A stretch of 63,899 nt of DNA, filler included, from Ministeria vibrans ATCC 50519 (GCA_943704425.1; 5 parts of 5 records of this genome joined end to end with filler, not necessarily neighbours in it); one strand, 5' to 3'; numbered from the whole stretch's first letter, positions 715-23,800 are shown. Made by a program: numbers and translations. Notes: generated by a model from the letters alone, not told the origin.

Positions 715-3700
715 ATGAGTAAGCGTCTGTTACCAAGGCAACCACTCTTTTTTAGAAAATAAAAAATAAAAACAACCTGTTCCTCCTTTCGTTCAGGTGA
801 CACGAGGTCTTTGTCTGCGTTCATGGACGACGACACGAGTCGCTCCGAGATGTCGGGATATGCGGCTGGCTCGTCAAGCGAACGGGTGCCCAATTCTCAT
901 GATTTGCCAGCCCTCGTCCAGCGTCTGAAACGCGGCGAAGAACGAAAAGCTGCCAACCAAAGCTTGTCACCTCGACGACACGACTTGTCCATGTACAAGT
1001 CCAAGTCGTCTTTGGCCGCCAGCAGGTGTGCAAAATTTTCTCCATCACCAATCAACACATCACATTTTCTTGTTGACATATTTGTTCTCTACTCTCAGTA
1101 TCAACGACTTACGCCAGGCTCTTGATCCATCCCGTGATCATACTCTCCAGTCCTTACTGTACCCGCCATATATAGCTTCTTCTTCCCGTTAGTACATGTC
1201 TTAATGTCTTTGACTTACTTAGGATCGCCACTGCAGCGAAGAAGCGTCAAGCGACTCGTCAGCGCGTTCTTGAGCAAGAACCGCCCCCGTCTCCACCTCA
1301 ACTCGAGCCCGAGCTGCAACCCAGCGCAAAGAAGCAACAAGCGGATTTTTTTGCGTTTCTCCGCTCACGCGTCGAGCAACAGTCTGAGGGTGAGCTTGAC
1401 GGTGCCTCGCTTACTCGCATCCTCTCGCTCGTCCCCGCCCCTCTCCGCGCCCACCCTTCTCTTCAACCTCTTGTTCACACTCTCATCAAGCACATCAAAG
1501 AAGAGTATGTTCGTGCCGAGACCGAATTTAATGTTCACTCGCGCATTCGTGTCCCAGACGAACGTAAAACCTGAAACATCCGAGAGAGCACAAACAAGAA
1601 AAAAAAACGAAGAAAAAAAACCATTTCACACTGCATTGTTTAGTTCTGTTCGACGAGGGGCGTCCTTTGAACGTCGTTGCACAGTCGGCTGTAAGGCACT
1701 CACGCGCACTGGAGAGTCAACCGCGCGCACCCGAGTCGGGCTTGGCCGTCGCCTGTGACTGGCACAACACCTTCTGTGACGCGCGCGTTCGCCTCGCCCC
1801 CTCATTGCACCTGGGTCATCCACATCTACAAGCTCTGTTACGACTCAACACCAAGCATTCACCGCACGTGTCCATGGCCGACGCATCTGTGGCGCGCACC
1901 AGCTCGGGCGGTGCCGTCGAGGTCTTTGCCTTCCGTGAACACGCGCGTGCAGCAGCAGAGCGCGCCGAGTCGCTTGTGCTCAACCGCTGGTACGCCGAAA
2001 TTATTGCTACCTTCCTCGACAACGACAAGGGTGACTCTGTCCCATCGTCGCTGTTTGGCGCTGCTGAGACACTCGTGGGAAACCAGATGCGAGCACTGCT
2101 GCACCGCTCTTTGGATGAGTATGTTACATTTTACACTAACCAAGAGCGCATCCACTGCCACTTGACGGTAGCAGGCATGCCGCTCTTTGCCGTGCGTCTT
2201 GCCCTTGCACCCACCACCACAACCAAAAACAGCCCACCACCATCATCATCATCACTACAGCTACACAACAACGATCGTCTGGTGGTTTTTGAGCCGTCCA
2301 TCGATGAGATCTTGCACAGCGTGACACACGTCTGCGACGTTATCACCGACATGCTTGCTTCGCTGCCCCTTATCCACACCCAAGTCTTGCCCATCAGTCA
2401 TCATCATGAGAGTTCCACCACAGCACGCTTCATTCCCTGTCGCGTTGACCCGCCTGTCATTGCACACGCAAAGACCCTCATTCAACATCACTTGACAGTC
2501 TACATTGAACAGGCTCGCAACTGCCACGCTCGTGTCGTCGCCGAATTTGCCTCGTTGCTTACCCATCAGCTTGATATGCATGTTACTGAGCTTCTTGACG
2601 CCGAGACTCCCCTTCTCGACTATGAGACTCTCATTGGCGAAATCAACGACATTCGCTCTCTCATCGATCGCGTGCGTCTCTTCAACGACCTCGAACACAC
2701 CACCATGTTCCAGCTTGACTATGCCGAGGTATCAGACTCTTATTTTCCCATCAATGTCACTTGGATCAACTCAAGCATCTTTGTTTTTTTTTGTTTTTTT
2801 GTTGTTCATCTCACCCAGTTGAAGGAGAGCTTGCTTGAACTGGCGCACGTACAGATGCGTCGACTCACAGATCGGCTGCTGGCCGACCACATGGCAGATG
2901 CACAGGCAATCTGCGATGAATACGAAGCGATTGCACGACGTGCATTGACCGTGCCGCAAACCACACAGGAGATGGTGAAGCAAGTAGACTTTGTGCACCA
3001 TGCCGTGATGCACGATGTCAATCGTCTGACGGCGCGCGTCAGTCTTGCAGCCAAGCGCATGGCCGCCCTGCTTGATGTGTCCGACACCCTTGATGATTCC
3101 GAGACAATCTTTGCACTCAACGAGACCGTAGTGCGCTGGCCGGCGCGCATCCAACCCATCTTTGACGAGAACAACGAGATTGTCATGAGCGCCCGACAGC
3201 GCAGCGAGCGTGATCTGCAGGAGAAGCGCGACCAGGTGTCGGCGATGCTTGAGGCAAGCGGGCGAAAGGCGGAGCAGTGTGCTGATTGGGGTACGGTGGC
3301 GGAGGTGCGCAAGTATGCTCGGGAGGTGCAGACGGTGCAGCGACAGCTCGAAGAGGCAAACCAGCTGATTGCGCATGTGAACAACGAGGAGCGTCTCTTT
3401 GAGTGGGAGCCCACCGAGTACCCGCGCGTCGCCGAAATCACCGCGCTCATTGAGCCCTACACGCGTCTTTACTTGCACGCTCTCAAATGGGAGAAGTCCT
3501 TGCGGCGCTGGATGGACTCAAGTCTGGGTGAGTTTCCGTCCGAGACCATTGAGACGGAGACGGACGAGATGCACCGTGACTGCTTCAAGTTTGCCAAGAT
3601 CTTTGACAAGCAATTTGCGCCCCGTCAGCTGGCCCTCGACGTCCGTGCTGCCATTTCCAACTTCAAGAAGAACTCTCCTATGATTCAAGTAAAGAGGCAA

Positions 3701-5966
3701 AAAAAAAAAAAATAAGGAGAGAGAAACAACAAACTCACAACGCGCCTTTGCGCGCATTGTTTTTATATAGATCTTTTGCAATCCGGGAATGCGCGAGAGA
3801 CACTGGGAGCGCATGTCGAGCCTGGTGGAACGCGACATTACGCCCGACAGCACCACGTCGCTGCGGAGCATGCTGAAAATGAATCTCACGGCCTACTTGG
3901 GCGAGCTTGCGTTGGTGAGCGAGGCGGCGAGCAAGGAGCACTCGCTGGAGACGGCATTGCAACGCATGAAAGGCGAGTGGGATGGCGTTCAGTTTACCCT
4001 TGCGGCGTATCGTGACACGGGCATTCGTGTGCTCTCGGCCATAGACGATCTCCAGTCTATGCTCGACGACCAGATTGTCAAGACACAGACCATGCGTGGC
4101 TCACAATTTATCGCGCCCATCGAGGGGCCCGTGCAGGAGTGGGAGAGCCGTCTGGTGTACACGCAGGAAACCATTGACGAGTGGTTGCGCGTGCAGGCAC
4201 AGTGGCTTGCACTTGAGCCCATCTTCAGCAGCGACGACATCAACCGACAGATGCCACAGGAGGGCAAGATGTTCCAGCAGGTGGATCGGACCTGGCGCGA
4301 AGTGATGGAAGTGGTCGAGCACGACTCTCAAGTGATGACCGCCATGGACCTTCCCAATCTCCGCCAACGCTTTTGCGATGCCAACGGTCTGCTCGACGCC
4401 ATCAATCGTGGTCTTCAGAGCTACCTCGAGGTCAAGCGACTCTTCTTCCCACGCTTCTTTTTTCTCAGCGATGACGAAATGCTCGAGATCCTCAGCGAGA
4501 CCAAGGACCCGACACGCGTTCAACCCCACCTGAAGAAGTGCTTCCAAGGCATCAACAAGCTGGAGTTTGACGACGAGCTTGTCATCCATGCCATGCTGAG
4601 TAGCGAAGGAGAGCGCATCAAAACAAGTTCGGCCATCAGCACGGCCGACGCCAAAGGTGCCGTCGAGCGATGGCTGCTGCAAGTGCAAGATGTGATGCGT
4701 GTGAGTGTGCGTCGTATCATTGAGGACGGCATCGATGCTTACGCGACCGACCCTCGCATTCAATGGGTGCTCGACTGGCCCGGTCAGGTGGTGTTGTGCG
4801 CGAGCCAGGTGTACTGGACACGTGAGGTGCACGCTGCCATCACTGACGGGGGACCACACGGTCTGCGCGCCTACCATGCGCGTCTCACCGAACAGCTTGA
4901 TGCTATTGTGGAACTGGTGCGTGGTCGACTTCCCAAACTCAATCGGGTTGCGCTCGGGGCACTCGTTGTCATCGATGTGCACGCTCGTGACGTCGTCCAT
5001 ACCATGGCCATCAAGGGTGTTGCCAAGGAGAACGACTTTGAGTGGCTCTCCCAGCTGCGTTACTACTGGCAGGACAACCAGGTCCAAGCGTGTATGATCA
5101 ACGCACAAGTCGAGTACGGCTACGAATACCTAGGCAACACCGGGCGACTAGTCATTACGCCGCTCACGGACCGTTGCTACCGCACTCTGATGGGTGCGTA
5201 CCACTTGCACCTTGGTGGCGCACCCGAAGGCCCCGCTGGCACTGGCAAGACGGAGACAGTCAAGGATTTGGCCAAGGCGCTCGCGACGCAGTGTGTCGTC
5301 TTTAACTGCTCCGATGGTCTCGACTACCTTGCCATGGGCAAGTTCTTCAAAGGTCTTGCCAGTACGGGTGCCTGGTCGTGCTTCGACGAGTTCAATCGCA
5401 TCGAGCTGGAAGTGCTCTCGGTCATTGCCCAGCAGATTCTCACCATCCAGCGCGCCATCATTGCGGGCGTCGACAGCTTCGTCTTCGAGGGCACCGAACT
5501 TGCTCTCAACCCCAAGTGCGCCGTCTACATCACCATGAATCCCGGCTATGCTGGTCGTTCCGATCTTCCCGGTACGGAACAAATTTAAACCCCCATTCTA
5601 ACTATTACCTCTTTAACTTTCTGCCAATCAATCTCATTTTTCGTTTATCCGTTTTTGCTTCGTAGACAATCTCAAGGCGCTGTTCCGCACTGTGGCCATG
5701 ATGGTCCCCGACTACGCTATGATTGCCGAGATCATGCTGTACTCGTATGGCTTTGTGCATGCGCGTGAGCTCTCTGTCAAGATTGTTACCACATACAAAC
5801 TGTGCAGTGAACAGCTGTCGTCGCAGCCACACTACGACTACGGTATGCGTGCGGTCAAGGCAGTCCTCACCGCTGCTGGTAGCCTCAAACTACGCTTTCC
5901 CACCGAGGACGAAAACATTCTAATGCTACGATCCATTGCCGACGCCAATCTCCGTAAGGCGATGGC

Positions 5967-6022
<56 letters not shown>

Positions 6023-9000
6023 TATAACAATAACAATAACAATAATAATTTTACGTTTTTTTCAACCCCTCAGCGAAATTTCTTGCTCATGACATTCCCC
6101 TGTTTGAGGGCATCATCAGTGATTTATTTCCTGGCATTCGCCTGCCCGATCCCGACTACCAGGACCTCCTGTGGGCCATCCACAAGAACTGTGCTGCTCG
6201 TCGTCTGCAGCCAACCAGCTTCTTTGTCAGCAAGGTTATTCAGACCTACGAAATGATGTTGGTATGCGGTGCAGCAAAACTGAAAGAATACCTTTTTCTA
6301 ATTGTCTCTCTGTCTCCTTGGGGGTTTGTTTAAAAAAATAGGTTCGACACGGATTTATGCTTGTGGGCGGTTCACTTGCCGGCAAAACGGAAGTGTTGAA
6401 AGTGCTGCAAGGCGCTCTGTGTGACCTGGCAGAGGCAGGCAAGATGAGTGAGCGTCGCACGCACTACCGCATCATCAATCCCAAGGCGGTGACTATCAAA
6501 CAGTTGTTTGGTCAGTTTGATGCAGTGAGTCACGAGTGGACCGATGGCGTGGTCGCCAACATCTTCCGCGAGTTTGCTTCGGCCGACAACAACGATCGCA
6601 AGTGGCTGTCGTTCTGTGGTCCAGTCGACACGCTCTGGATTGAGTCTTGTACGCTTTGTGCACTATACTTACTACCTATTACTAAACCTTTCTCTACTTC
6701 TCTCCGTAGTGTAAGTGCTGAACAAGTTGGTCTTCTCGACATTACATTCTCGTTTACTATTGTTGTCCGACTTATGTATTCTCCCACTGACTCACTTTCT
6801 TTAGGAATACTGTTTTGGACGACAACAAGATTTTGTGCCTGATGAGTGGCGAAATCATTCAAATGAGCGCCTCAATGAGTCTTATCTTTGAAACGATGGA
6901 TTTGTCTCAGGCAAGTCCGGCCACCGTCTCACGCTGTGGTATGATCTACATGGAACCGGCATCGCTTGGCTGGCGACCCCTCGTCTCGTCGTGGATTGAG
7001 CGATACCTTGGCGAGCGGGCTCGAGTTGAGGCGGACGAAGGAGACGCGCCGCCTGCTGTCCCTGCCTCTGCCACGGTGGTGTTTGGTGAGCGCGAGCGGG
7101 GCTATGTGAAAGGTGCCATTGAGTGGCTTGCGCCACTGCTGTTGGCCTTTGTGCGACGTTCGTGCACCGAAATGGTGGAGACGAGCGATGGACATTTGGT
7201 GGTGAGTCTGTTCAAACTCATTGAAATGCAGCTCGACGAGTTGCGTGCGACCGAGTTTCAGGCGGCACCCTCGCCCGACCTGGTGCAGTCGTGGCTTTTT
7301 GGCACCCTTGTGTTTGCGGCCATTTGGGGCCTTGGGGGCACACTGGACCGTGTCTCTCGTACCAAGTTTGACGTGTTTTTGCGTCGCCTGCTTGGAGTGG
7401 GCACGCGCGAGCAGCGCAGTGCTCTTGCCGCTGAAGTGATGACGCCGCTCCAGATGGAGCAGGCCGACGCAGAAAGCGCACTGCCGAAAACGTTTAAGGT
7501 TGAGGTAGCGCTGCCCGAGACCGCCGACTGCTTCACCTTTCAGTTTGTGCGTCGAGGCGGTCGAGGCAAATGGATTCCTTGGACCGAAGGACTCGTCACG
7601 ACGATTGATGCGCCACGCACAACACTCATGAGCGAGCTGACGGTGCCCACTATGGACACGGCACGCTACACGCGTCTCATGGACATGGGTATTCGTGCGG
7701 GGCGTCCAATGGTGTTTGTGGGACCGACGGGCACGGGCAAGTCGACGTATGCCAAGAACCTGCTCGTGCGCGACCTGCCTCGGGACCAGTTCACCCCCGT
7801 GTTTATCAACTTCTCAGCACAGACGACTGCAAATCAGACGCAGTCGATGATCATGAGCAAACTGGACAAGCGGCGACGCGGCGTGTATGGCCCGCAGATG
7901 GGACACAAGTGCGTCGTGTTTGTCGATGACATCAACATGCCGGCCCTCGAGCAGTACGGCGCGCAGCCGCCTATCGAGCTGTTGCGTCAGCTCCTCGACC
8001 AGGAACAGTGGTACGACCTCAAGGATACGTTGCCAATTAAACTGGTGGACGTGCAACTTGTCGCCGCCATGTGTCCTCCGGGTGGCGGTCGTGCGGCCAT
8101 TTCGTCGCGTTTGCTGCGCCACTTTAATGTCGTGAGCGTGTGTGACTTTGACGATGACTCACTGGTGCGTATCTTCTCGACCATTGTTGACTGGTTTCTG
8201 CGTGTCAACGAGTTTGACGCGTCTCTCATTACACCGGGAAAGCAGTTGGTACATGCCACGGCGGACGTGTACAAGGCGGCCGTGGCAAATCTGCTGCCAA
8301 CCCCGGCCAAGAGCCACTACACCTTTAACTTGCGCGACTTCTCGCGTGTCATTGAGGGTGTGCTTCTGCTGCAACCCCACAGCTTCGCGTCATCTGCATC
8401 TTCTTCTTCTGTTGCTCGTATGAGCCGCGTGTGGACCCACGAGATCTACCGCGTGTTCTACGATCGTCTAGTGGACGACGGTGATCGCGCCTGGCTCCAC
8501 GAGTGCGCTCGCAAGACCATGGAGAAGCGCTTCCAAATGCGCATGGAGGAGGTCTTTGCCGATTTGCGTGGCGACACTGCTACTGCAGTGGGGCCCGTTC
8601 AAGAGGCGCATTTGCGCAAGCTCATATACTCGCACATGGCATGCGACGCGCCCGAGTCTGCGCTCTCGGCTACGGCCAATGCCGCCACTCCCGCCGCGAC
8701 GGCCGCCTCAATCCAGTGCGCCTACCGCGAAATGGGCGACCTTGCATCAATGCGTGCGGGTGTGGTGGCACAGCTCGAGGAGTACAACCAGACGCACAAG
8801 GCCCAGATGCGCCTGGTGGTCTTTCCGTACGTGCTCGAGCACCTAGCGCGCATTGCACGTCTGCTGCGGACACCCGGTGGCAATGTGATGCTTGTTGGTG
8901 TGGGCGGTAGTGGGCGACAGTCGCTGACCCGACTTGCAACCTTCACGGCCGAAATGGGATTGTTTACTCCCGAGATTACTAAGTCGTATGGACGTGCGGA

Positions 9001-11115
9001 GTGGTGCGAGGATCTCAAGGCGCTGCTGCGACGCGCCGGTGGCAAGGGCGAGGAGACGGTCTTCTTGCTGACCGATGCGCAAATCAAGGATGAGTCATTC
9101 CTCGAGGACGTCAGCAATCTGCTGAATACGGCCGAAGTACCCAATTTGTATGCGCCCGACGAACGCCAAGAGATCATGGACATGGTGCGCGTGGCCCTGC
9201 GCGACTCGGGACAGCCGTCCGAGTTGTCACCGTTGGCACTCTTCCAAGCGTTTGTCGATCGTTGCCGAGCCAACCTGCACATTGTGTTGTGCATGTCGCC
9301 CATTGGCACGGCCTTTCGTAGTCGTCTGCGGCAGTACCCGTCGCTCATCAACTGCTGCACCATTGACTGGTTTCAGCCGTGGCCCGCCGACGGCCTGCAG
9401 ACGGTTGCCGAAGAATTTCTGGCCGACGTGGAGTTGGCGGACGACGAGCGACATGCCGTGGTGACTCTCTGCCAGTATTTCCACACGTCCGTGGCGGCCC
9501 TGAGCGAGCGATTTGCGGCACAACTGGCTCGTCATAACTATGTGACGCCCACAAGCTACTTGGAGCTTATTAGTACGTTTAAGGAGGTGCTGACACGTCG
9601 TCGAGACGAGGTGGTGTGGCAGCGACGACGCTACGAGGTGGGATTGGAGCGTCTGGCGTTTGCCAGCGAGCAAGTGGTGGACATGCAGCGCGAGCTAGAG
9701 TTGCTCAAGCCGCAGTTGGTGGTGGCTCAACGCAAAAATCAAGAAATGCTGGTAGTCATACAGGAAGAGTCGAAGCAAGTGCAGGCCACGAGTGAGATGG
9801 TGAGTGCCGAGGAGACGACGGCCAATGCGCAGGCAGAGAGTGCGCGGCTGCTCAAAGAGGAGTGCGAGGCGGACCTGAGCGAGGCGATGCCGGCCCTGAA
9901 TGCGGCTGTGACAGCACTTAACACGCTGCGCCCGAGTGACATTGCCATTGTAAAGACAATGAAGACACCGCCGACAGTGATCAAGCTGGTGCTTGAGTCG
10001 GTCTGCGTCATGTTCCAGAAGCGACCGGCACGCGTGCCCGACCCGCGCGGCACAGGCAAGATGATTGACGACTACTGGCCGACGAGTGTCAAGATGCTGG
10101 GCGACATGAAGTTTCTTGAGTCGCTCATTGGCTACGAGAAGGACACCATTCCGGCGTCGGTCATGCAGCGCATCCGATCCGACTTTATTCCACATGCCGA
10201 CTTTGTGCCTGACAAGGTGGCCAAGGCGTCGAGTGCGGCCGAGGGATTGTGCAAGTGGGTGCGTGCCATTGAAGTGTACGATCGTGTCGCCAAGGTGGTG
10301 ACGCCTAAGAAGGCGGCACTGGCCAGTGCCGAAGCAGAACTGGCTGCCACCATAGCATTGCTGCAGGAGAAGCGTCGGTTGCTGGCGGAGGTGCAAGCCA
10401 AGTTGGGAGCACTCGAGGCCAAGTTTTCCTCGATGCAGGCGGAGAAGGAGCGACTGGAGGCACAGGTGGATTTGTGTACTACCAAGCTAGTGCGAGCCGA
10501 GCAGCTGATTGGCGGGCTGGGAGGCGAGCAGGAGCGGTGGCGTGCGGCCGCAAAGACGCTGAGCGAGACGTACCGCAACTTGACGGGCGACGTGCTTGTT
10601 GCGTCGGGTGTCATTGCCTACTTGGGTGCATTTACGTCGACGTATCGCCGCGAGTGCACTACCGAATGGCTTGCAACCTGTCAGCGGCTCAGCGTGCGCT
10701 GTAGCGACGCCGACAATTTTTCGCTGACACGATTGTTAGGCGATCCGGTGGCCGTGCGCGCATGGAACATTGCGGGACTGCCACACGACCCCTTTTCCAT
10801 CGACAACGGTGTCATTGTGGCCAATGGGCGTCGTTGGCCGTTGATCATCGATCCACAAGGTCAGGCGAACAAGTGGATCCGCAACATGGAGCGCGATCGA
10901 GGTTTGCAGGTCGTCAAGCTGAGCGACTCGGACTTTGCGCGCACTCTCGAGAATGCCGTTCAGTTTGGTCAGCCGGTGCTTATTGAGAATGTCGGAGAGG
11001 AGCTCGATCCGACCCTCGAGCCGCTTCTCATGAAGCAGACCTTCAAGCAAGGTATTGCAATAAAGATAAAAATTAAGGGTATCAATGATCGATTGGAACT
11101 CGTGTTTGTGTTTGT

Positions 11116-11146
<31 letters not shown>

Positions 11147-13984
11147 CTTAGGGGGCGTGATGAGCATTCGATTTGGTGATTCGGTGATTGAGTATTCGGA
11201 TAACTTCCGATTGTACATTACGACAAAATTGCCCAACCCGCATTTCCTTCCAGAGCTCAGTGTCAAGGTAAAGAATGCAAAAAGGGAGAAAATGAAAAGA
11301 ATTGATATTTCATTGATATTGATTGAGACGTACTGTTGTTTTTTTTTTGTTTCGAAGGTGACTGTGCTCAACTTTATGATCACACAAGAGGGACTGGAAG
11401 ATCAGCTGTTGGGGCTTGTTGTAGCCAAGGAACGACCCGAGTTGGAGGCAGAGAAGAACCAGTTGATTGTGCAGTCGGCTGAAAATAAGAAACTGCTCAA
11501 AGAGATTGAGGATCGAGTAAGCCTCAGAAAATAAGAAAAGTGCATTTTTATTGTTTTTATTTTATTTTTTTCTTGTTTTTTTTTGATTATTGTTTTTTAG
11601 ATTCTTGAAACGATGTCCTCGGTGGAAGGGAACATTCTGGAGAGCGAAGAGGCTGTGGTGATATTGTCGGAGTCGAAGAAGCTGAGTGATGAGATTAGTG
11701 CGAAGCAACAGATTGCGGAGGAGACGGAACGGAAGATTGATGAGTCGCGCTTGGGCTATCAAGGGATTGCGGAGCACTCTGCGCTGTTGTTTTTTGCGTT
11801 GACGGAGCTGTCGCATGTTGATCCGATGTACCAGTACTCTTTATCGTGGTTTATTTGGCTGTTTACGCTGAGCATTGAACAGAGCAATAAGAGTCGTGTG
11901 CTTGAGAAGCGTTTGCGCTATCTCACGGACCATTTCACCTACTCATTATATTGCAATGTGTGTCGGTCGCTCTTTGAGAAGGACAAGTTGCTTTTTTCGT
12001 TTCTTCTCGCCCTGCAGGTACGACACTTACTATATAATATTGTTGATGTATTAAGAAAAATGGAGAAGAGGAGAGCTGTGTAAACAAGACTATATACCAA
12101 GCATCACAACACAAGGTGCAAGTTGTGACTCCTTTGTGTTTTTAGTTGGGACGGAAGCAAGGAGAGATGCAACAGGAAGAGTTAACGTTTCTTCTGACAG
12201 GCGGGGTGGGGCTGTCCAATGAGCATGCGCAGCCAACGGAGACAGCGGACTGGCTGAGTACGCGCAGCTGGGACGAGCTGTGTCGGTTGGTGGAGGGTAC
12301 GTGTGCGGCCACTAGCAAAGCGTTTGCGGGGCTTCTCTTGGACTTTGCGCGTGAGGAGAGTGCGCGCGAGGAGTGGCGCGTGTTTCATGGATCGCGCACA
12401 CCGGAGACGGCGCCGTTGCCAAAGCAGTGGCAATCGCGTGTGACGCCCTTCCGCCGTCTCCTGCTGGTGCGTGCTCTGCGACCCGACAAACTGACTGCGG
12501 CCATCACACGCTATGTCAATGAGCGTCTTGGGGCGCGGTTTGTCGAGCCGCCACCACTTGATTTGGAAGGGACGTTTCGCGACTCGCACGCCAGCACTCC
12601 CATTGTGTTTGTGCTTTCAGCGGGAGCCGATCCAATGGCACAGCTGAGTCGCTTTGCCGTTCTCAAAGGATTCGAAGGGGACCGATTTCAGTCCATCTCG
12701 CTCGGTCAAGGGCAAGGACCCATTGCACAGGTAGAATAAAATGAAGAAAACATGAAATGAAAATTCGAGAGAGAGACAGAGAAGAGGGAGAAAGAGAGGA
12801 CAGTGACATAAAGGGGGAAAAAAAAAACAAAACTAATCTAATTAATTTTTCTTAGGCGATGATTCAGCGTGCCACCAAAACAGGCTCATGGGTGGTGCTG
12901 CAGAACTGTCACCTGGCCGTGTCGTGGCTGCCAACCCTCGAGCGGCTGTGTGACGACCTTGGCCGTCGCAGCAGTCCCTCAGACAGTGATGATCCGGGCG
13001 AGGCTGTCCATCCCGAGTTCCGTCTCTGGCTCACTTCCTATCCCTCCAAGAGCTTTCCCGTGGCCATTCTTCAAAATGGTGTCAAATTGATCACAGAAGG
13101 TACACTCGCAATACTATTTTATCAACATTGCAACTTTCTTCTCTTATAGCGCCAAAGGGATTGCGGCAGAATCTCCTCCGCTCATACACATCTGATCCCA
13201 TCTCAGGTAAAAGAAAGAAAAACAAAAAAAAAGCTATTGACGCTTTTTTATTATTATGGTGTATGTACAGATACGCAGTTCTTTGGGGGAACAGTGAGCA
13301 GCGAGCGTGAGTGTGTGTGGCAGAAACTGCTGTTTGGATTGTGCTTCTTCCATGCGATTGTCCAGGAGCGCAGACAGTTTGGTCCTCAGGGGTTCAACAT
13401 TCCGTATGAGTTCAATGAGTCGGATCTCCGGTATGTAATTGTGACTCTAGTTTGTCATTGATTGACTGACTGACTTACGTGTCGTGTTTTAGGATCTCAT
13501 TGCGTCAGTTGCAAATGTTTCTTGATGAGACGTACGATGTGGTTCCCTTTGATGCACTGTTCTATCTGATTGGACAGTGTAACTACGGTGGACGGGTTAC
13601 GGACGATTGGGACAGACGCACAGTCACTCATTTGCTTGAAGGGTATCAAAAAACAACGGGGAGAGAGAAATTGTAGTTTGTGAGAAAGCGAAGAAAAAGT
13701 GACTCTGTGAGTGGAACGAAAGTCGAAAGATCGATAGAGAGAATGTGTGTGTGTGTGTGGATAAGTGTGTGTGGATAAGTGTGTGTGTGTGTGTGTCTTT
13801 GTGGTGTGTGTGTGTGTCTTTGTGGTGTGTGTGTATGTATGTCTTTGTGTGTGTGGAAAAGTGTGTGTGTGTGTGTCTTTGTGTGTGTGGAAAAGTGTGT
13901 GTGTGTGTGTGTGTGTCTTTGTGGTGTGTGTGTGTGTCTTTGTGGTGTGTGTGTATGTCTTTGTGTGTGTGGGAAAGTGTGTGA

Positions 13985-14015
<31 letters not shown>

Positions 14016-15510
14016 TCTTTGTGGTGCGTGTGTGTGCCTTTGTGGTGTGTGTGTGTGTGTGTGTGTGACTGAGTGCGTACGTTTGCCCTTGGATGTAGAT
14101 TCTTCTGTCGTGAAGTGGCTGACGATCATAAGTACCGCTTCAGCCAGAGTGGACTGTACTATGCACCGCCCAAGGGAGACCATGCCACCTTTGTTGAGTA
14201 TATTCAAAGTCTGCCGACCACTCAATCACCTGAAGTAAGAACTTTATTGCATTGCCCATGGAGTGATTGTACAATTTGACAATGATTGTTTGTGTCTCTC
14301 TTTGCACAGCTGTTTGGAATGCACGACAATGCGGACATATCTCGGGAGCTTAACGAGACGACTCAGCTCACGGAGAGTCTTCTTCTCACGCAACAGGGCT
14401 CTGCAACTGCCTCACTCACCACCCTGTCGTCCACTGAGACGACTGAGTCTGCTTTGCACGACATTTGCGAGCGGATTTTGTCGCAGATTCCCGCCGAGTA
14501 CAATGTGACGCTGGCAATGGAGCGCTATCCGGTGTGCTACCAGGAGAGCATGAACACAGTGCTTGTGCAGGAGCTTATTCGCTACAATCGACTTATCGCG
14601 GTCATTCGACGAACGCTCTGTGATGTCCAGCGGGCTCAAAAGGGCTTAATTCTTATGTCAAGCGAACTCGAAGATGTAACAAGGACAAAGTGCGAGAGAG
14701 GGCGATATAATAACTCCTTGTCTGGGTGCTCTTTGGGTGTAGGTCGCGCGCTCACTGTTGACAGGCAAGATTCCACAGAGTTGGGGGAAACAGTCTTATC
14801 CGAGTCTGAAGCCATTGGGCGCGTATGTGGCGGATTTGCGCGACAGGCTGTCCTTCCTTCAAGTAAGCGCGCTGCACACCATGAGAAAGTTGCTTGACTG
14901 GCATGGGTTTGATGATAGGACTGGATTGATAAAGGAGCGCCTGCCGTGTACTGGATCAGCGGGTTCTTCTTTACACAGTCGTTCCTGACGGGCGCACTGC
15001 AGAACTACGCGCGAGCACACAAGGTCGCCATTGACACGTTCACTTTTGCCTTTGAGGTGTTGAGCGACGCATCCGCCTCTGACCCTTCCTCGTGGCCGCA
15101 GCAAGGGCCGTCGCTTGACGCGGGCGGAGGCGTCTTTGTCCACGGGTTGTTCCTTGACGGTGCGCGCTGGGACGCGCAAAAGGGAGTGCTGGCCGAGCAG
15201 CATGCCAAAGAACTTTTTGCTCCCCTGCCCGTCCTCCGTTTCCGCCCCTGCGCCAAGGCTGACTTGAACCGCACCAACACATACACAGCTCCCGTTTACA
15301 AGGTATGCCGCAGCCATGGTCATTCAGCCAACACTCACTCACTGTCACTTGTGTGCTCTCCCATTCGTCTAGACGGCCGCTCGTCGTGGCTCTCTCTCGA
15401 CGACGGGCCACAGTACCAACTTTGTACTGCCCATCTTCCTTCTGTCAGATCAGCCCGAACGCCACTGGATTCGTCGTGGTGTCGCCTGTCTCTGTTCTCT
15501 TTCCTATTAA
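715..15510 (+). CDS. DNAH12: Axonemal inner-arm dynein heavy chain, DNAH12-like, multi-exon
   Basis: AAA1 P-loop [30 protein letters not shown]3 [11 protein letters not shown]4 [14 protein letters not shown], stalk/MTBD, C-terminus [10 protein letters not shown]...[11 protein letters not shown]; [24 protein letters not shown] resembles DNAH12 as recalled. About 20 GT-AG introns traced by eye; first coding exon appears to be ATGA (715-718); stop TAA 15508-15510. Confidence 0.93.
13744..14070. repeat. Intronic compound (GT)n microsatellite; other intronic simple repeats at 5968-6049 (AAT), 19971-20059 (CT), 38328-38403 (CA), 45108-45200 (TTC), 56109-56430 (TTA), 57750-57865 (AAT)
   Basis: Simple repeats seen directly, within inferred introns or at contig ends. 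Confidence 0.95.
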
Positions 15511-15551: not shown

Positions 15552-16715
15552 TCACAAGGAATTGAGCTTTGCTCTCACAAAACGAAAAATGTAACGACCC
15601 TTCTCAAACAGAGTCAGTGCGAAGCGCAAAGGATCCGCAGCGGCCGTCGACTGATTGAGGGACAGCCAGAGTCGCAGCAAGTGGCGTCTGCGGTCGGCTG
15701 CGTCGTGGTAGGCGGCGCGCGAGTGCAGCACGACGTGGTTTGAGATGAGCTGGATGTCGCCGCGCTCGAAGCGCATGGCGAGGGCGAATGTCGGGTCGTG
15801 GGCAATGTCGCGCACGGTGCGGATAAGAGCGTCGTGAAGAGGACTCAGTGGAGGTGCGTTAGGGTAGTCGTGTGCTGTGCGGAAGTATTCGACGTGGAAG
15901 AAGGTGCTCAGTCGACCGTTGAAGAGACGCGCAGGCTCGACAGGAAAGTAATCCACTCCGCCCGTGCCTCGCGTGTCGAGTAGCATGGGCTCAAACAGCG
16001 CGGCCGCTAGCGTCTTGTTGCGGCGCCACAGTTCGTTGTAGACACTGATGGACGACGCGAGCTTCGACTCGCCTCCTTCCATGGCCGTCTCAAGGCACAG
16101 CAGGCCGACCACATCGGCGGCGTCACAGTGGAAATCAATCGCCTCTCTTGTCCGATACTGCCGCACAGTGCCCAACGGCGGTGCATCCATGCCATGGAAT
16201 TCGTTGATCACGTTGCCCAGGAGGTCGTCGGCGTTGTTCTGCGCGCCCGGCTGTCCGAGAAGCGCACCAAGGCACCAGAAGAAGCGTTGGCTCTGCTCCA
16301 ACGACCACCGGTCGATGGGCACGCGGCGAATCAGAGAGACCCCAAGCCCGTCCACTGACAGTTCATGCTGCAGACGTTCTGTCAGGGAGAGGAGCCAGGC
16401 AGGCGCAGCTGCGCGGCATTTCTCCGCGCTGAGCGAGCGGAGTGTGTCCAGCGAACCAACCATCTGCAGCAACGCTGCTTGCTGCTCATCGCTGAATGAT
16501 GTTTGCCACGCACTCGTGTTGCTGTGCATTTCGTCGCTCAGCCAGGCGGCGCGCAGGGCAAACGGCGCAGGAGGCCAGTGCGAACTTGGAAGGTGAGGAC
16601 GAGCAAAGTAGTGAATGGACTGGGAAGTGACCGTCTTGTGCTCCTGCTGCTGCTGTGCGCCAAGTATGATAGCCAGTGCAGCAATGGAAACGACGAGCAC
16701 GCTTCTTCTCCCCAT
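15552..16715 (-). CDS. TauD/TfdA-like Fe(II)/2-oxoglutarate dioxygenase with N-terminal signal peptide, intronless
   Basis: HxD motif DFHCDAADVVGLLCL, GGESKLASS, GDIQLISNHVVLHSRAAY, RHLLRLWL; hydrophobic N-terminus VLVVSIAALAIILGA. Confidence 0.85.
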   Translation of the reverse strand: MGRRSVLVVSIAALAIILGAQQQQEHKTVTSQSIHYFARPHLPSSHWPPAPFALRAAWLSDEMHSNTSAWQTSFSDEQQAALLQMVGSLDTLRSLSAEKCRAAAPAWLLSLTERLQHELSVDGLGVSLIRRVPIDRWSLEQSQRFFWCLGALLGQPGAQNNADDLLGNVINEFHGMDAPPLGTVRQYRTREAIDFHCDAADVVGLLCLETAMEGGESKLASSISVYNELWRRNKTLAAALFEPMLLDTRGTGGVDYFPVEPARLFNGRLSTFFHVEYFRTAHDYPNAPPLSPLHDALIRTVRDIAHDPTFALAMRFERGDIQLISNHVVLHSRAAYHDAADRRRHLLRLWLSLNQSTAAADPLRFALTLFEKGRYIFRFVRAKLNSL

Positions 16716-16863: not shown

Positions 16864-19197
16864 ATGACGACCCTTCTGGACGAGAAACAGACGCTCCTGG
16901 CGTGCCAGGCTCTCCTGCAACATGTTGAAAAGGTATCCTTCACATTTCCACGTGTATCGAACTTCTTGCCCGATTTCCGCCCCTGCGACTTGCCCGTGTT
17001 GCACTACTGCGTGCACTGTGCCTGTGGCAAGTGGAATTTAGTCGGGAAAATGTCTTGGATGGACAATTGCAAAGCATTCATTCACTTTCATTTTGGGCCT
17101 TTCACTGACGCTCGTGCTCTCCTCCTTAGGCATCCAAGGACAAGCTCTTCGACGACGCCGAGTACATCAACATGACGTTTGCTCTGAAGAAGATCCCGCC
17201 GCCCCGCTCGCGCCCTTTGGCCTTGTACCGAAGCACAAAACTGTCAAACATTCATTTTTCTCATGACGACGTGTGTGTCTTTCTCCCTTCTCTCTCTCTC
17301 AGCCCCTTGCCCCACTCCCTGTACGGCGACGACGCCGAGATGTGTGTTATTGTGCGCGATCCACCGGCTGGCAAGAGTGACGACCACTTCCTTCCTACAG
17401 AGGCACTGCCGCCAAACACGAAGGTTAGCAAACGACTGACTCATAATTTTGATCACACCACTCATATGATGACGGCCCTTACCTGTGTAGTCTATGACTC
17501 TGACGCACTTGCGAAAGCACTACTCCACCTACGAGTTGAAACGCCAACTCGCACAGCTGTACGATCTCTTCCTCGCCGACGCTGCCATCATTCCGGCTCT
17601 CCCGCGACTCTGCGGAAAGGCCTTTTACGACAAGAAAAAGTAAACCTTGAACGCAAGCCCACCTTCTCTTGTACTGACGCATACTGGTTTGATTGCTCTT
17701 TATTTGTTTTGCTAGGCAACCGGTGCCTGTCCTGTTGCAAGGCGACATTGAGCAGAAATTGATTCGAGCACGCGACTCCACCTATCTGTACATCACAGGA
17801 GGCTCATGCTGGTACACACACGCCATAAAGACACGCACGCCACTCACTTTATATATGCGTATAGTTCTGTGAAAGTTGGCCTGACAAACCAGACGGCGGC
17901 GGAAGTGTGTGCGAATGTGATGGCGGCGGCAGCGGGATTTGCAGGAGCGATGCCGCATGGATGGGCACTGGTGCAGTCGGTGCATCTCAAGACGCCCGAA
18001 TCGGTTGCACTGCCCGTGTTTATGTCGCGCCTCAGTGCTGATGATGCTCTGCCGACCGATGCACTGTGGCCGGCGCAGGAGGCAAACCGGAAGAAGCGCC
18101 TGGCGGAAGCAGAGGAGACGGAGGGTCAGCAGCAGAAGAAGAAGAAGGCGAAGAAGCAGAAGAAGACGGAGATCACGGTGGCAAAACCGACGACAGCAGC
18201 CTCATCCACAACAGTAGCACCCAAGAAGGCGAAAAAGCGCAGTGCTGAAGAGGCAGTGGAGGAGAAAGTCAAGGCGACACCTGTTGCTGTTGCAACAGCA
18301 ACGCCCGTCTCAGCAAAGAAGAAGCAGAAGAAGACCACGACTACTACTACTACTACTACTACTACTGATGCTGCTGCTGCTGCAACGGCCACGCCCCTTG
18401 CAACGCCCACTAAGACTGCGTCGCCGGCTCTCACGCGCTCGGGTCTTGCGAAAAAGATTGCGACGCCCAGCAAGATGAAGAAGACACCCGACACACCCAA
18501 GGCAGTGCAGGAGACGCCCGCGATTGAGAAGGCAGTGCAGGAGACGCCCGCGACTGAGACGGCGGTGAAGACGCCCAAGAAGACGCCCAAGAAGAAAACT
18601 ATCGAGGCGAGCAAGACACCGTCGAAGGAGGCGAGCAAGACACCATCAAAGGAGAGCGCACTGGAGACGAAGAAGAGCGACGAAGCAATCACCGCAACGC
18701 CCAAGAAGACGCCCAAGAAGAAGACTGTTGAGGCGAGCAAGACACCGTCGAAGGAGAGCGCACCTAAAACTCCCAAGGCGAAGAAGAGCGATGACGCAGT
18801 CGCTGCAACGCCCAAGAAGACAGCCGAGGCGAGCAAGACACCGTCGAAGGAAAGCGCACCCAAGACACCTAAGACGAAGAAGAGCGATGACGCAGTCGCT
18901 GCAACGCCCAAGAAGACTCCCAAGAAGAAGCAGGCGGCAGTTCCGGTGGCAGAGGCAGCGGCCCCATTGCCGCAGGAGCAGCAGAAGAGCGTCGCACCAG
19001 AAGAGCCGACGCCCAGCAAGACAGCCAACAAGAAGACACCCAAGAAGGCAGCGACGCCCGCCGCAACGCCCAAGTCTACTAAGAAAGCCAAGACGGTCGT
19101 CTCCACTGCCAGTGCGAGTGCCTCTCCCGCCAAACCGTCCCCACCCGCCACCCGCGCCCGCCAGGCCGCCAAGCGCGCCGCCACCCCCAAGAAATAA
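16864..19197 (+). CDS. RSL1D1: Ribosomal L1 domain-containing protein (RSL1D1/Cic1/Utp30 family) with long K/T/P-rich tail
   Basis: Spliced exons give QALLQHVEK, PLPHSLYGDDAEMCVIVRDP, YELKRQLAQLYDLFLADAAIIPALPRLCGKAFYDKK, SVKVGLTNQTAAEVCANV, VQSVHLKTPESVALPVF, then a TPKK-repeat tail. Confidence 0.85.
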
Positions 19198-19226: not shown

Positions 19227-19970
19227 TTATACAATGCCCCAACGGTCTTCAAATGCACCGCACACTTTGGCACAGACAAGACTGGCACTTAGAGGATACT
19301 CGCTGATGCTCACTGCCTCGTCTGTGTACGTCCACGTCTCCTTACCGTGTGCCATTGCCCCAATCACAACCACAATGGGTGTGTCGTCAGGTAGACTCGC
19401 TGCCCAGTCTCGTGCGTGCATGCATTTGTCCGCTTGATCACTCATCGCTATAGAGAGACGCAGAGAGAAGAAGCGAAAACTGCGTTCAGTCCGACTGTAC
19501 TGTGCTGTTGTTCTCACCAATCTTTCTACACCCCGGTGGGAGATGATCTGTCACAGGGCATTTGATGACTTTGAGCAGCTTGTCAGGGCCATCCTTGGCA
19601 CGAATACTGAGTTTGTGCAACAGTTGCACTGTAAGAAAGTGTGAGTGGAGAGGGTATTACTTTGTTTCTTTCTCCCTCCCCTCTCTACCACTTTGTTTCT
19701 TTCTCCTCTCTCTATCACTTTCTTTCTCCCCCCTCTCTCTATCACTTTGTTTCTTTCTCCTCTCTCTATCACTTTGTTTCTTCTCTCTATCACTTTCTCC
19801 TCTCTCTATCACTTTGTTTCTTTCTCCTCTCTCTATCACTTTGTTTCTTTCTCCTCTCTCTATCACTTTGTTTCTTTCTCCTCTCTCTATCACTTTGTTT
19901 CTTTCTCCCTTCTCTCTCTCTCTCTCGCTCTCTCTGNNNNNNNNNNNNNNNNNNNNNNNNNNNNNNNNNN

Positions 19971-20062
<92 letters not shown>

Positions 20063-20897: not shown

Positions 20898-23800
20898 TTA
20901 TGCATGAGCACCCCTCGTCGAGTAAGGACTCGTAATGACATTATTCGACAGCGGCACATACTGCTCGCTGTCGTGGAGATCCTTCTTGGATGACGAGACT
21001 AGCTCACCAAACTCAATGGAGGAGAGCACGCTGGCATTCGAGGCGGAGGCACAGGCGGCGGCGTGACGCGCCGAGTAGCGACGACGGCGCTCAAAGGCGC
21101 CCTTGCGGTGGTGACGCCATGCCACGTACCCCACAATAGCCAAAATCAAAAGTCCAATGGCTGCACCGACGCCTGCGCCAATGGCTGCCATCGAGGACGA
21201 CTGTGCGTCCGCCTGGCCCGCACTGTCCGACGGACAGGTACACTCCACCTCTTCCGCAAGGTTCATCTCGCCCACACACACTCCGCCATTCTCGGCCGTG
21301 ACCACAACGTAGCGCGACCGTGAACTCGCACAGCCACTGGTCATACCCGAGGCGCCTCCCGTCGACAGCACCGCACTGCAGTCGCTCCAAGTCGTCCACG
21401 ACGAGAGCACACAGTCGCGCGGTGCATTCACCTGACAAGTGGTCACGCGCGTCTGGCGCCACACACCCTCGTTGGTGCACACAAGCGAGTCGTCGCCCAC
21501 CAGAATAAGGCTGTTGTTGCACGAGACGAGGCAGTGGTCGCCGACATCTTGTCCGGTACACGAGACGACACTGAGCTCGGGTGCCGCCGGTGCGTTCAGG
21601 CACTGCGACACAGTGCAGTTAGGCAGCAGCGTGGGTTCCCACTCGCCCGAGGTCGCATTGCACACGCGCTCGGCGCTCCCTTGCAAGTCGGTGGCCGACG
21701 GACACGAGTAGGCGCACTCATAAAGCTCATTGCGGAGCGCATTGACCACACACGTCTGCTCAAGGCCGTCGGGAAGCGACGCGGGCAGCGTGCATGGAAT
21801 GGACGAACAGGTGGAAGGTGCCAGCACCTCGCCGGTCGTCACTGCGCGCCACGTGCCGTCGCCTGAGCACACACGCATGGGCACACCATCCATGGCATAG
21901 CCGGCGTTGCACGTGTACACACATCGCTCGCCCACGTCCGTTCCCTCGCACTCCACACCTCCGTTGGCTATGCCTGCAGGCGGGGTACACTCAACGGCGT
22001 TGGCTACGCAACGCCCTTCGTCGTTAGGAAAGAGCGACAGGTCGCTGCACACCGTGCCAATGTCAGTGTCTTGGCGCAGCGCAGCCGCACCCGAGCAGCG
22101 CTCGTGAATAGCCACGGTACACGCCGAGTATGAGTGTGGCAATGACGCGTTGCTCAGCAGACCGCCAACGCGGTTGCACGCCACCACATCCTTGGCAGTC
22201 ACATTGCACTGCGAATAGTCGTAGGTCTCGTTAGCGGCACACGAGCTGCCCGCACACCCTAGGTACGCCGTGGGGTTGGCCGTGGGCAAGACGTGCTTCG
22301 ATAGGAACGGCTTCAGGTTGCTCGGCGGCACCACCACGCGTCCAGCGAGCGTGGATGACGACAAGGCCGAGTTGTATAGCATCACACTCGCAAGTTCGCC
22401 GCGGAACAATGCCGGCTCGAGTTGCGCAACGAGACGCGACAGGTCAGCCCCAGCCGTCGAGTACAGGGTCGCCACTTGTGCATCGCTCATGTTTGTGTGC
22501 CACACTGCAAGTTCGTCCAGCAGGGCCGTAGTGTACTGCCAAGTGTACGAGTTCCAAGGGAACGTGTTCCACGGCATCATGGCCACACGATTCGCCGCGT
22601 ACGAGTACGAGCCGGCCGAGCCGGTCACGTCTTCGCCCACACGAACACCGTTGTCGTAGGCACGTAGGCCCGATGCGTGCGAATAGGTCAGCACATAGTG
22701 GTGCCAGTCGCCATCGTTCGAGAGCGTGTACGAGATGCCGTACGAGCGCGTGGTTGTCTTCAAATAGAAGCCGGTCTTGTATATTTGTACACCACCGCGG
22801 CTGCTAGAGTAGGGCTCGCCACCGTTAAGAATGTAGCGGCCCGTCGAGGTCTTTTTGAGCCAGAGCGAGACAGTCAGACCCGACTCTGCGCACATGTGCG
22901 GCCGCACGAGGCACTCGCTTTCGGGCCATGACATTCCGTACACGGGCGAACGGCCCACGCCTATGGAAATACAGGCGCCCTTGCCGCGGACGCATTCGTT
23001 GGCGGGGCGCAAAAAGGTACCACCACCATTGCCGGCAGGAGGACCCACCGACCAGGCACTGGCGGGTTGCGAGCGTGCGGAGCCCAGGTCGGGGATGCCG
23101 TTGAGTGGGTAGTCGCTAGCAGCGCTGTCGCGCATCCGATCAAACGACCAGTAGTGGCGTGGCTCAGGAACACCCGCGGGCATTTGCGAGCCGACCACCG
23201 CTGTTTGGAGCGTACTGCCGGCGTTGTCGTTAAAACCAAGAAAAAGCGGCAGCGATTCGGTGTTGCTGACGGAGGCGCCGGCAAGGTCGACGGCACTGTC
23301 AAAGACACCGTTGAGGTAAAAGCGTGCCGTCTGCGTGTCCCACGTGACTGCAACGTGGGTCCATACGTTGACCGAGACTCGTCCACGAGACACGGCCGCC
23401 AGCGACGTGTCGGACAAGGTGAGACGCAGACGTGCCGTGTCGTCAAAGGTCAGTGCAAAGTCTTGAGTGCCAGTGCCATCACCACTTGAACGCACCACAA
23501 TGCCGGCAAACGGCTGAATGTGTGAGTCGGGCTTGACCCACGCCTCAATGGTCATGTTGCCCGCGGCACTGGGCATTTTCTCACAGTTGGTGCGGAAACG
23601 AAGAACGCTGCTCGCCTGCGAGCCGCGCAGACGCACTGCACCCGTGTTCTCCACGCCGGCCAGAGCGGGAAACTGCGAAAGAGGCCCCTCGCGACCTGCC
23701 ACAATGCCCGATGTTCCGTACACGCGTGCGTCGTACTCCTCGAGCGAGTGTCCATTGTCCGAGCTGTCGACAATGCCCGACGACTCGAAGGTGCCCCAAA

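What the first reader, a model, noticed from the sequence alone, without database searches (positions are those of the whole stretch)
6640..6820. Probable one-nucleotide exon in the dynein heavy chain gene
Seen: the exon ends TGG ATT GAG TCT T|GTACGC (donor 6649) and the next long exon begins CTTTAG|G AAT ACT GTT TTG GAC GAC AAC AAG (6805). Direct joining gives TCT TGA, a stop and frameshift. Between them lies TCTCTACTTCTCTCCGTAG|T|GTAAGT: a pyrimidine tract and AG (6708-6709), a single T (6710), then a consensus donor (6711). Including the T yields TCT TTG AAT, i.e. [13 protein letters not shown], matching the conserved dynein AAA2 motif WIE(S/N)(M/L)NTVLDDN. The flanking introns (61 and 94 nt) are of normal size for this genome with branch-point-like ACTAAAC and ACTGAC. 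Known: 1-nt exons are very rare (one is reported in Arabidopsis APC11) and are missed by gene predictors.
Basis: partly seen in the sequence, partly recalled or inferred. Interest (0 to 1): 0.8.

Follow-up and report, generated by a model that had tools for sequence, protein, structure and literature searches.

The report
One-nucleotide exon in dynein gene
A flagellar dynein motor gene can be read correctly only if a single T, sitting between two ordinary short introns, is spliced in as an exon; a second dynein gene in the same genome has the same layout, so this is very probably a real example of the rare "one-base exon".

Summary
The upstream exon ends TGG ATT GAG TCT T at 6648. A 61-nt GT-AG intron follows (6649-6709), then a lone T (6710), then a 94-nt intron starting GTAAGT (6711-6804). 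The next exon starts G AAT ACT at 6805.

Of 19 junctions checked in this gene, this is the only one whose phases do not fit (1+1). Adding the T gives [13 protein letters not shown].

In 160 homologues the spacer between WIE and N is always two residues. The second is M, L, I or F, and all of those codons have T in the middle position.

The decisive new evidence is a paralogue about 50% identical in protein (contig C1488 of the same genome). It has the same layout, TCA A|GTACGA…CCTAG|T|GTAAGT…TTTTAG|G AAC, which gives WIES-M-N. The surrounding intron sequence does not align and the codons differ at synonymous sites. This rules out an assembly error or a chance match.

A strict genome-wide pattern search found no other such site. 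The six closest genes from other species that could be fetched have no intron here.

No transcript data could be reached, so the splicing is inferred. One-base exons are already documented in Arabidopsis APC11, Fusarium CYP621A and Coprinopsis (13 cases). This is a new member of a known, rare kind.

The parts
823..15509 (+). Axonemal (inner-arm, DNAH7/12-like) dynein heavy chain gene. It has at least 20 introns, and the ends given are approximate.
   Evidence: Pfam finds DHC_N2, AAA_6, Dynein_AAA_lid and AAA_7 on the exons. The nearest named relatives are dynein axonemal heavy chain 7/12.
6342..6648 (+). Upstream exon, ending ...TGG ATT GAG TCT T. It leaves one base of the next codon.
   Evidence: The translation ends ...[10 protein letters not shown]. 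Phase bookkeeping shows one leftover base.
6649..6709 (+). Intron A, 61 nt. Donor GTACGC, branch-like TACTAAAC at 6680-6687, pyrimidine tract at 6688-6706, acceptor TAG.
   Evidence: The GTACG donor type also occurs in three other introns of this gene.
6710..6710 (+). One-nucleotide exon, T. It is the middle base of the codon T-T-G (Leu).
   Evidence: The same T is conserved in the paralogue at G000:C1488:104918 on the minus strand.
6711..6804 (+). Intron B, 94 nt. Donor GTAAGT, the only full-consensus donor among 20 in the gene. Branch-like ACTGAC at 6786-6791, acceptor TTTAG.
   Evidence: The dynein paralogue on C1168 has a phase-2 intron at the same codon position.
6805..11051 (+). Downstream exon, starting G AAT ACT. 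It supplies the third base of the Leu codon and then NTVLDDNK...
   Evidence: tblastn with the Gonapodya protein P0121 leaves exactly residue 1688 (the M of WIENMN) uncovered between the two exons.

Best explanation
Window base 6710 (T) is a constitutive one-nucleotide exon of an axonemal dynein heavy chain gene. Two ordinary U2-type GT-AG introns, 61 nt and 94 nt, abut it. Their removal joins TCT T + T + G AAT, giving Ser-Leu-Asn and restoring the universally conserved motif WIE-x-(M/L)-NTVLDDNK of the AAA2 module.

The acceptor of intron A and the donor of intron B overlap physically: U1 would sit on AGT|GTAAGT. The two introns are therefore most likely removed one after the other, by intron definition, as at a recursive-splicing ratchet point but keeping one base. 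Either order gives a usable site. If A goes first, CTTT|GTAAGT remains as a donor. If B goes first, CCGTAG|TGAAT remains as an acceptor. The full-consensus GTAAGT donor and the strong pyrimidine tract, both conserved in the paralogue, probably make up for the lack of exon context.

What is shown: the sequence layout, the phase mismatch, the conservation in a paralogue and the residue statistics. What is inferred: that the spliceosome actually uses these sites, and that the removal is sequential.
For: 1. The layout is exactly as described.

2. Of 19 junctions in the gene, 18 are phase-compatible plain GT-AG introns. Only 6648|6805 is 1+1. The other introns are 50-128 nt plus one of 456 nt, median 83 nt. 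So 61 and 94 nt are typical, while a single 156-nt intron would be the second longest.

3. Paralogue G000:C1488 (minus strand) reads TGG ATT GAA TCA A|GTACGA...(80 nt)...CCTAG|T|GTAAGT...(77 nt)...TTTTAG|G AAC. This gives A-T-G, so WIESMN.

4. The two genes are only about 50% identical over 1150 aa. Their introns are unalignable apart from GTACG, TAGTGTAAGT and TTTAGGAA, and the flanking codons differ at synonymous sites. The 10-nt core is therefore under selection and is not a recent copy.

5. In 160 homologous dyneins the spacer is always 2 residues. The second residue is M in 134, L in 23, I in 2 and F in 1, and all of these have T at codon position 2.

6. I enumerated all two-intron GT-AG solutions. 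Only the 1-nt exon keeps the spacing, and only it is shared by both genes.

7. Genome-wide, the full layout pattern hits only these two loci, with 0 controls.

8. Both genes have long intact reading frames of 1454 and 1429 aa.
Against: No cDNA or RNA-seq could be reached for this organism.

Six related genes from other species have no intron at this codon, so there is no cross-species conservation. These are four of the nearest relatives of this gene (Gonapodya, two JGI metagenome contigs, one Logan contig) and two relatives of the C1168 paralogue (Carpediemonas, Pythium).

The branch-like motif of intron A in this gene (ACTAAAC) is imperfect.

The tree does not resolve whether the two paralogues are sisters (AU p = 0.42). 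A single origin is therefore compatible with the data but not shown.
Confidence: 0.88

Rival explanations
1. Assembly or sequencing error. A T is missing at the exon edge (true sequence TCT TT|GTACGC), so there is one ordinary 156-nt phase-2 intron, and the internal AG-T-GTAAGT is a coincidence.
For: Restoring a T at 6648 would also give TCT TTG AAT. The paralogue on C1168 has exactly such a single phase-2 intron, AAC AT|GTACGC...TTTTAG|G AAC.
Against: The same supposed missing T would have to be missing in C1488 as well (TCA A|GTACGA). That site is not in a homopolymer. Both introns would also have to carry, by chance, one of only 8 pyrimidine tract-YAG-N-GTAAGT sites in a 29.7-Mb genome, with N = T both times.
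Confidence: 0.02
2. A cryptic upstream donor GA|GTCTTG (6644/6645) is joined to the acceptor at 6804. This gives an in-frame [11 protein letters not shown] that lacks two residues.
For: It is in frame and uses GT-AG.
Against: None of 160 homologues has a spacer other than 2 residues. All 20 donors of this gene start with GTA, and GTCTTG does not. C1488 has no GT upstream of its GTACGA donor, so this model cannot explain the shared layout.
Confidence: 0.03
3. The main product skips the T. The result is TCT TGA, an immediate stop, in this gene and a frameshift in C1488. On this reading the locus is a pseudogene, or the site is a switch for unproductive splicing.
For: Skipping yields an in-frame TGA at once. 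One-base exons are presumably easy to skip. Flagellar genes are stage-regulated (general knowledge).
Against: Both genes keep intact frames of more than 1400 codons on either side, and about 20 other correct junctions. The splice core is conserved between paralogues while the introns have diverged. That pattern is expected only if inclusion matters.
Confidence: 0.05
4. One intron is removed by non-canonical splicing (GT...TA or TA...AG), or the structure is a nested stwintron.
For: Single-intron joins that keep the spacing do exist on paper: TCT TGG (S-W) in this gene and TCA AGG (S-R) in C1488. An internal GT at 6709-6710 could start a nested intron that recreates an AG.
Against: Those joins need GT-TA or TA-AG borders, and they put W or R where 160 of 160 homologues have M, L, I or F. 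The nested [A2,3]-type reading (internal intron 6709-6804) yields TCT TAA, a stop. There is no GGT for a [D1,2] stwintron.
Confidence: 0.01

Closest known systems
Single-nucleotide exon of Arabidopsis thaliana APC11 (Guo & Liu 2015, PMC4674806)
   Same: It is a constitutive 1-nt exon between two GT-AG introns, needed to keep the reading frame, and it was missed by annotation.
   Different: The APC11 case is proven by cDNA and GFP-fusion assays in plants. The case here is inferred from sequence and paralogue conservation only, in a protist-like genome with short introns of about 80 nt.
One-nucleotide exon of Fusarium CYP621A P450 genes (Nelson & Syed 2026, PMC12940212), and the 13 one-nt exons in the long-read annotation of Coprinopsis cinerea (PMC12230235)
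   Same: In Fusarium there is a phase-1 and phase-2 mismatch at a conserved motif of fixed spacing. The lone base is the middle base of a conserved codon. The combined intron is about twice the usual length. The AG-N-GT core is conserved among homologues.
   Different: In Fusarium the base is G (AGGGT) and is conserved among orthologues of 20 species, with SRA read support. Here the base is T and is conserved between two old paralogues within one genome, and it is absent from the relatives in other species that could be examined.
Recursive splicing ratchet points (zero-nucleotide exons) in Drosophila and human, and fungal stwintrons (PMC8605326, PMC5587772)
   Same: An acceptor and a donor are juxtaposed, so they cannot be occupied at once and must be used in consecutive splicing reactions.
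   Different: Ratchet points leave no base behind and subdivide very long introns. Stwintrons have an intron inside a splice signal of another intron. Here two complete short introns leave one coding base between them.

Membership tests
One-nucleotide (single-nucleotide) exon | The flanking exons are out of phase by exactly one base when joined directly | tested here: met
   The phases are 1+1 at 6648|6805. This is the only incompatible junction of 19. The direct join gives TCT TGA.
One-nucleotide (single-nucleotide) exon | An internal AG-N-GT with a canonical acceptor (pyrimidine tract, branch-like motif) and a canonical donor, splitting the gap into two introns of normal size | tested here: met
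   CCGTAG|T|GTAAGT, with introns of 61 and 94 nt against a gene median of 83 nt. It is the only AG.GT site in the gap.
One-nucleotide (single-nucleotide) exon | Including the base restores a conserved residue and a fixed motif spacing | tested here: met
   TTG (Leu) here and ATG (Met) in C1488. In 160 of 160 homologues the spacer is 2 residues and the second residue is M, L, I or F.
One-nucleotide (single-nucleotide) exon | The layout is conserved in homologous genes | tested here: met
   It is present in paralogue G000:C1488. It is not present in Gonapodya or in five other related loci, so it is specific to this lineage.
One-nucleotide (single-nucleotide) exon | Transcripts (cDNA or RNA-seq reads) spanning both junctions | not testable with these tools
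   No read data were available. No near-identical protein fragments were found in the protein collection.
Stwintron (spliceosomal twin intron) | An internal intron interrupts the donor, branch or acceptor element of an external intron | tested here: not met
   There is no GGT for the [D1,2] type. The [A2,3]-type reading (internal intron 6709-6804) gives TCT TAA. The two introns are complete and side by side.
Recursive-splicing ratchet point | AG|GT juxtaposed with zero exonic bases inside a long intron | tested here: not met
   One base is retained, and the whole gap is only 156 nt. The resemblance is mechanistic only.
Axonemal dynein heavy chain | DHC_N2 linker plus AAA1-AAA3 modules, with dynein-specific lids | tested here: met
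   Pfam E-values are DHC_N2 8.6e-116, AAA_6 7.9e-80, Dynein_AAA_lid 5.7e-25 and AAA_7 1.9e-54. The best named hits are axonemal heavy chain 7/12.

The most novel reading that the evidence does not exclude
The one-base exon may be an old, selectively maintained state that also acts as the intermediate of one-nucleotide intron sliding. Five of the ten dynein heavy chain paralogues found in this genome carry introns at four different positions within a 4-nt stretch of the same motif:
- AG|T CTC (C2237)
- TCG|ATG (C1679)
- T|..|T|..|G (this gene)
- A|..|T|..|G (C1488)
- AT|G (C1168)

Loss of one or the other of two abutting introns would turn a phase-1 intron into a phase-2 intron. Skipping of the base gives an immediate stop, so it could also serve as an on/off switch for flagellar dynein expression.
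Probability: 0.15. Interest if true: 0.7.

Novelty: new member of a known kind. Interest (0 to 1): 0.55.

Why it matters
One-base exons mark the lower limit of what the spliceosome can define as an exon. Only a few are documented, and gene predictors miss them. The usual result is a large, essential gene split or truncated into two broken models.

This case adds a well-supported example in a motor protein. It comes with an internal control that other reports lack: two long-diverged paralogues that keep the same 10-nt AG-T-GTAAGT core while completing different codons (TTG and ATG).

It offers a simple system for asking two questions: in what order abutting introns are removed, and whether such structures are intermediates of intron sliding. 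Practically, it shows that annotating this genome needs micro-exon-aware methods.

Tried and rejected
**Transcript or orthologue support**
- A protein search with the downstream exon and an all-against-library HMMER search found nothing closer than about 50% identity.
- Six related genes were fetched: four of the nearest relatives of this gene (Gonapodya L039, JGI L051 and L052, Logan L058) and two relatives of the C1168 paralogue (Carpediemonas L059, Pythium L060). All read W(I/V)EN(M/L)N without an intron. The contig L057 ends before the motif.

**Metagenome scan for the full layout pattern**
- It gave two hits, both chance matches in AT-rich non-dynein DNA.

**Genome-wide strict pattern**
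- The six other hits are ordinary exon ends, coding sequence or non-coding flanks. None is a further 1-nt exon.
- Weaker donors (GTAnnn) were not screened, because the pattern becomes too degenerate.

**Alternative splice models**
- Micro-exons of 10, 16 or 25 nt in this gene, and of 16, 22 or 34 nt in C1488, either add residues or contain stops, and none is shared between the two genes.
- The nested-intron and non-canonical-border readings were rejected, as set out under the rival explanations.

**Other checks**
- Sisterhood of the two paralogues is unresolved: C1488 sat next to Gonapodya in FastTree, and the AU test does not reject a C25+C1488 clade (p = 0.42).
- Rfam finds no RNA family in the two introns or anywhere in the window.
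- The organism was not identified. The nearest relatives of the different paralogues are scattered across chytrids, insects, oomycetes, Carpediemonas and prasinophytes.

**Joined model**
- The spliced gene model was not sent to any search tool. Exons were searched separately, by reference.
- Scripts joined only a few dozen bases around the junction, to read the frame.

Full report
**1. The observation**

- The exon ends TGG ATT GAG TCT T at 6648.
- GTACGC starts at 6649.
- A pyrimidine-rich stretch ends in TAG at 6707-6709.
- A lone T stands at 6710.
- GTAAGT occupies 6711-6716.
- CTTTAG ends at 6804, and the next exon starts G AAT ACT GTT TTG GAC GAC AAC AAG at 6805.
- The branch-like motifs TACTAAAC (6680-6687) and ACTGAC (6786-6791) are present.
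- The exon translations are ...[11 protein letters not shown] and [20 protein letters not shown]....
- Joining the two long exons directly gives TCT TGA.

**2. The gene**

The window carries a large gene on the + strand, from about 823 to about 15509.
- Pfam finds DHC_N2, AAA_6, Dynein_AAA_lid and AAA_7 on its exons.
- The nearest named relatives are axonemal dynein heavy chains 7/12, also called Dhc62B.
- I mapped 19 junctions from 2728 to 15373.
- All donors begin GTA. Only the donor at 6711 is the full GTAAGT.
- Intron lengths are 50-128 nt, plus one of 456 nt filled with a TG repeat. The median is 83 nt.
- By phase bookkeeping, 18 junctions are compatible plain GT-AG introns. Only 6648|6805 is incompatible: one leftover base plus one leading base.
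- Splitting the 156-nt gap at AG|T|GT gives introns of 61 and 94 nt, both typical for this gene.

**3. What the protein family requires**

I took the homologous dyneins returned by the searches and kept the 160 that carry the motif.
- The spacer between W(I/V)E and N(T/S)(V/L)LDD is always exactly two residues.
- The first residue is N, S or D.
- The second is M (134), L (23), I (2) or F (1). All of these have T at the second codon position, which is the base that stands alone at 6710.
- tblastn with the best relative (P0121, Gonapodya prolifera) leaves exactly one residue uncovered between the two exons: the M of WIENMN.

**4. The decisive comparison: a paralogue**

I searched the window's own genome (29.7 Mb, 2860 contigs) with the two flanking exons and found ten dynein heavy chain loci.

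The closest is on contig C1488, minus strand. It reads TGG ATT GAA TCA A|GTACGA...(80 nt)...CTCCTAG|T|GTAAGTA...(77 nt)...GTTTTAG|G AAC ACT.

The single T, at C1488:104918, completes A-T-G, giving [13 protein letters not shown].
- The two genes are only about 50% identical over 1150 residues and about 25% in the tail.
- Their introns do not align except for GTACG, the 10-mer TAGTGTAAGT and TTTAGGAA.
- Nearly every flanking codon differs at a synonymous site.

The core is therefore conserved by selection. It is not a recent duplication or a gene conversion.

An assembly error would have to occur twice, the second time outside any homopolymer.

**5. Chance**

- YAGNGTAAGT occurs once in the window, against 0.19 expected.
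- In the whole genome, YYYYYNYAGNGTAAGT occurs 8 times, against 25 for the reversed control. Two of the 8 are these homologous sites. The other six are ordinary exon ends, coding sequence or non-coding flanks.
- The full layout pattern (WIE codons, four bases, GTA..., YAG-N-GTA..., YAG-GAAY) hits only these two loci, with no controls.

**6. Alternatives enumerated**

A script listed every two-intron GT-AG solution that restores the frame.
- Apart from the 1-nt exon, this gene allows micro-exons of 10, 16 or 25 nt.
- C1488 allows micro-exons of 16, 22 or 34 nt.
- All of them add residues or contain stops, use non-GTA donors, and are not shared between the two genes.
- Single-intron joins that keep the spacing need GT-TA or TA-AG borders. 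They would encode W or R, which are never seen at this position.
- A nested reading with an internal intron from the GT at 6709 gives TCT TAA.

**7. Other species**

Nothing closer than about 50% identity exists in the protein collections.
- Four of the nearest relatives whose DNA could be fetched have no intron at this codon: Gonapodya L039, JGI contigs L051 and L052, and Logan contig L058.
- Two relatives of paralogue C1168 also have none there: Carpediemonas L059 and Pythium L060.
- A metagenome scan for the layout gave only two chance hits.

The feature is therefore specific to this lineage.

Whether the two paralogues are sisters is unresolved. FastTree put C1488 next to Gonapodya. The AU test does not reject a C25+C1488 clade, p = 0.42.

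**8. Mechanism (inferred)**

Both introns have complete signals of their own, so intron definition suffices.

The acceptor of intron A and the donor of intron B overlap. Two spliceosomes cannot occupy them together, so removal should be sequential, as at recursive-splicing ratchet points and in fungal stwintrons (PMC8605326, PMC5587772).

Either order leaves a usable site.

The consensus GTAAGT donor is unique among the 20 donors of this gene and is conserved in the paralogue. Together with the long pyrimidine tracts, it plausibly compensates for the missing exon context.

Skipping the T gives an immediate TGA in this gene, so mis-splicing would be unproductive.

**9. Origin (speculative)**

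Five of the ten dynein paralogues have introns at four positions within a 4-nt stretch of this motif:

| Paralogue | Layout at the motif |
|---|---|
| C2237 | GAG AG\|...\|T CTC |
| C1679 | TCG\|...\|ATG |
| This gene (C25) | T\|...\|T\|...\|G |
| C1488 | A\|...\|T\|...\|G |
| C1168 | AAC AT\|GTACGC...TTTTAG\|G AAC |

C1168's phase-2 intron sits where intron B sits. Its outer borders look like those of the 156-nt gap here, but with the T at the exon edge.

Two routes are possible. A second intron may have been gained one base upstream of an existing one. Or the edge T may have been lost and rescued by an internal AG-T-GT, a route also suggested for Fusarium (PMC12940212).

**10. What is known already**

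One-nucleotide exons are documented in three places:
- Arabidopsis APC11 (PMC4674806).
- Fusarium CYP621A, with read support (PMC12940212).
- Coprinopsis cinerea, where 13 cases come from long reads (PMC12230235).

The present case meets four of the five defining features. The fifth, transcripts, could not be tested. It is not a stwintron, and it is not a zero-nucleotide ratchet point.

**11. Procedure note**

The spliced model was searched exon by exon, by reference. Scripts joined only a few dozen bases around the junction, to read the frame.

**Verdict**

This is a new member of a known, rare kind. Its interest is moderate to high because of the paralogue conservation and the nearby discordant introns.

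Noticed in passing
G000 loci L025 (C1679), L026 (C1168), L029 (C2237) and L022 (C1488); window 6636-6810: Five of the ten dynein heavy chain paralogues have introns at four different positions within a 4-nt stretch of the WIE-x-(M/L)-N motif. They sit at phase 2 in the Ser codon, at phase 0, and at phases 1 and 2 in the Met/Leu codon. Six related genes fetched from other species have none there. This looks like an intron-gain hot spot, or like intron sliding.
   Followed up: partly
window 13643-14098: This is the longest intron of the dynein gene (456 nt). It is almost entirely a TG dinucleotide array with a higher-order repeat of about 116 nt.
   Followed up: no
window 5954-6073 and 11052-11151: One intron is filled with a (TAA)n microsatellite of 27 copies at 5967-6049. 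Another has a run of about 35 T before its acceptor.
   Followed up: no
window 17806-19197 (+): A 463-aa open frame with no Pfam hit. It is very rich in Lys, Thr, Pro and Ala, with TPKKTPKKK-type repeats (tandem units of 24-96 nt). It accounts for the strong A-over-T skew of 0.52 at 18001-19000. It may be a basic nuclear or nucleolar protein.
   Followed up: no
window 20901-25347 (-) and 15555-16715 (-): The neighbouring genes are an M60-like (enhancin-type) peptidase with Laminin_G_3 and Sushi domains, and a TauD/TfdA-family dioxygenase.
   Followed up: no
window 19655-20059: An intergenic pyrimidine-rich tandem array with 27/54/121-nt units of CTTTCTCCTCTCTCTATCA type, followed by a perfect (TC)44.
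   Followed up: no
L022 (G000:C1488:104720-104767, minus strand): Paralogue C1488 has an extra short AT-rich intron after ...IIQMPEG, which the window gene lacks. The two genes share only some intron positions: near P0121 residues 1427, 1587 and 1688.
   Followed up: partly
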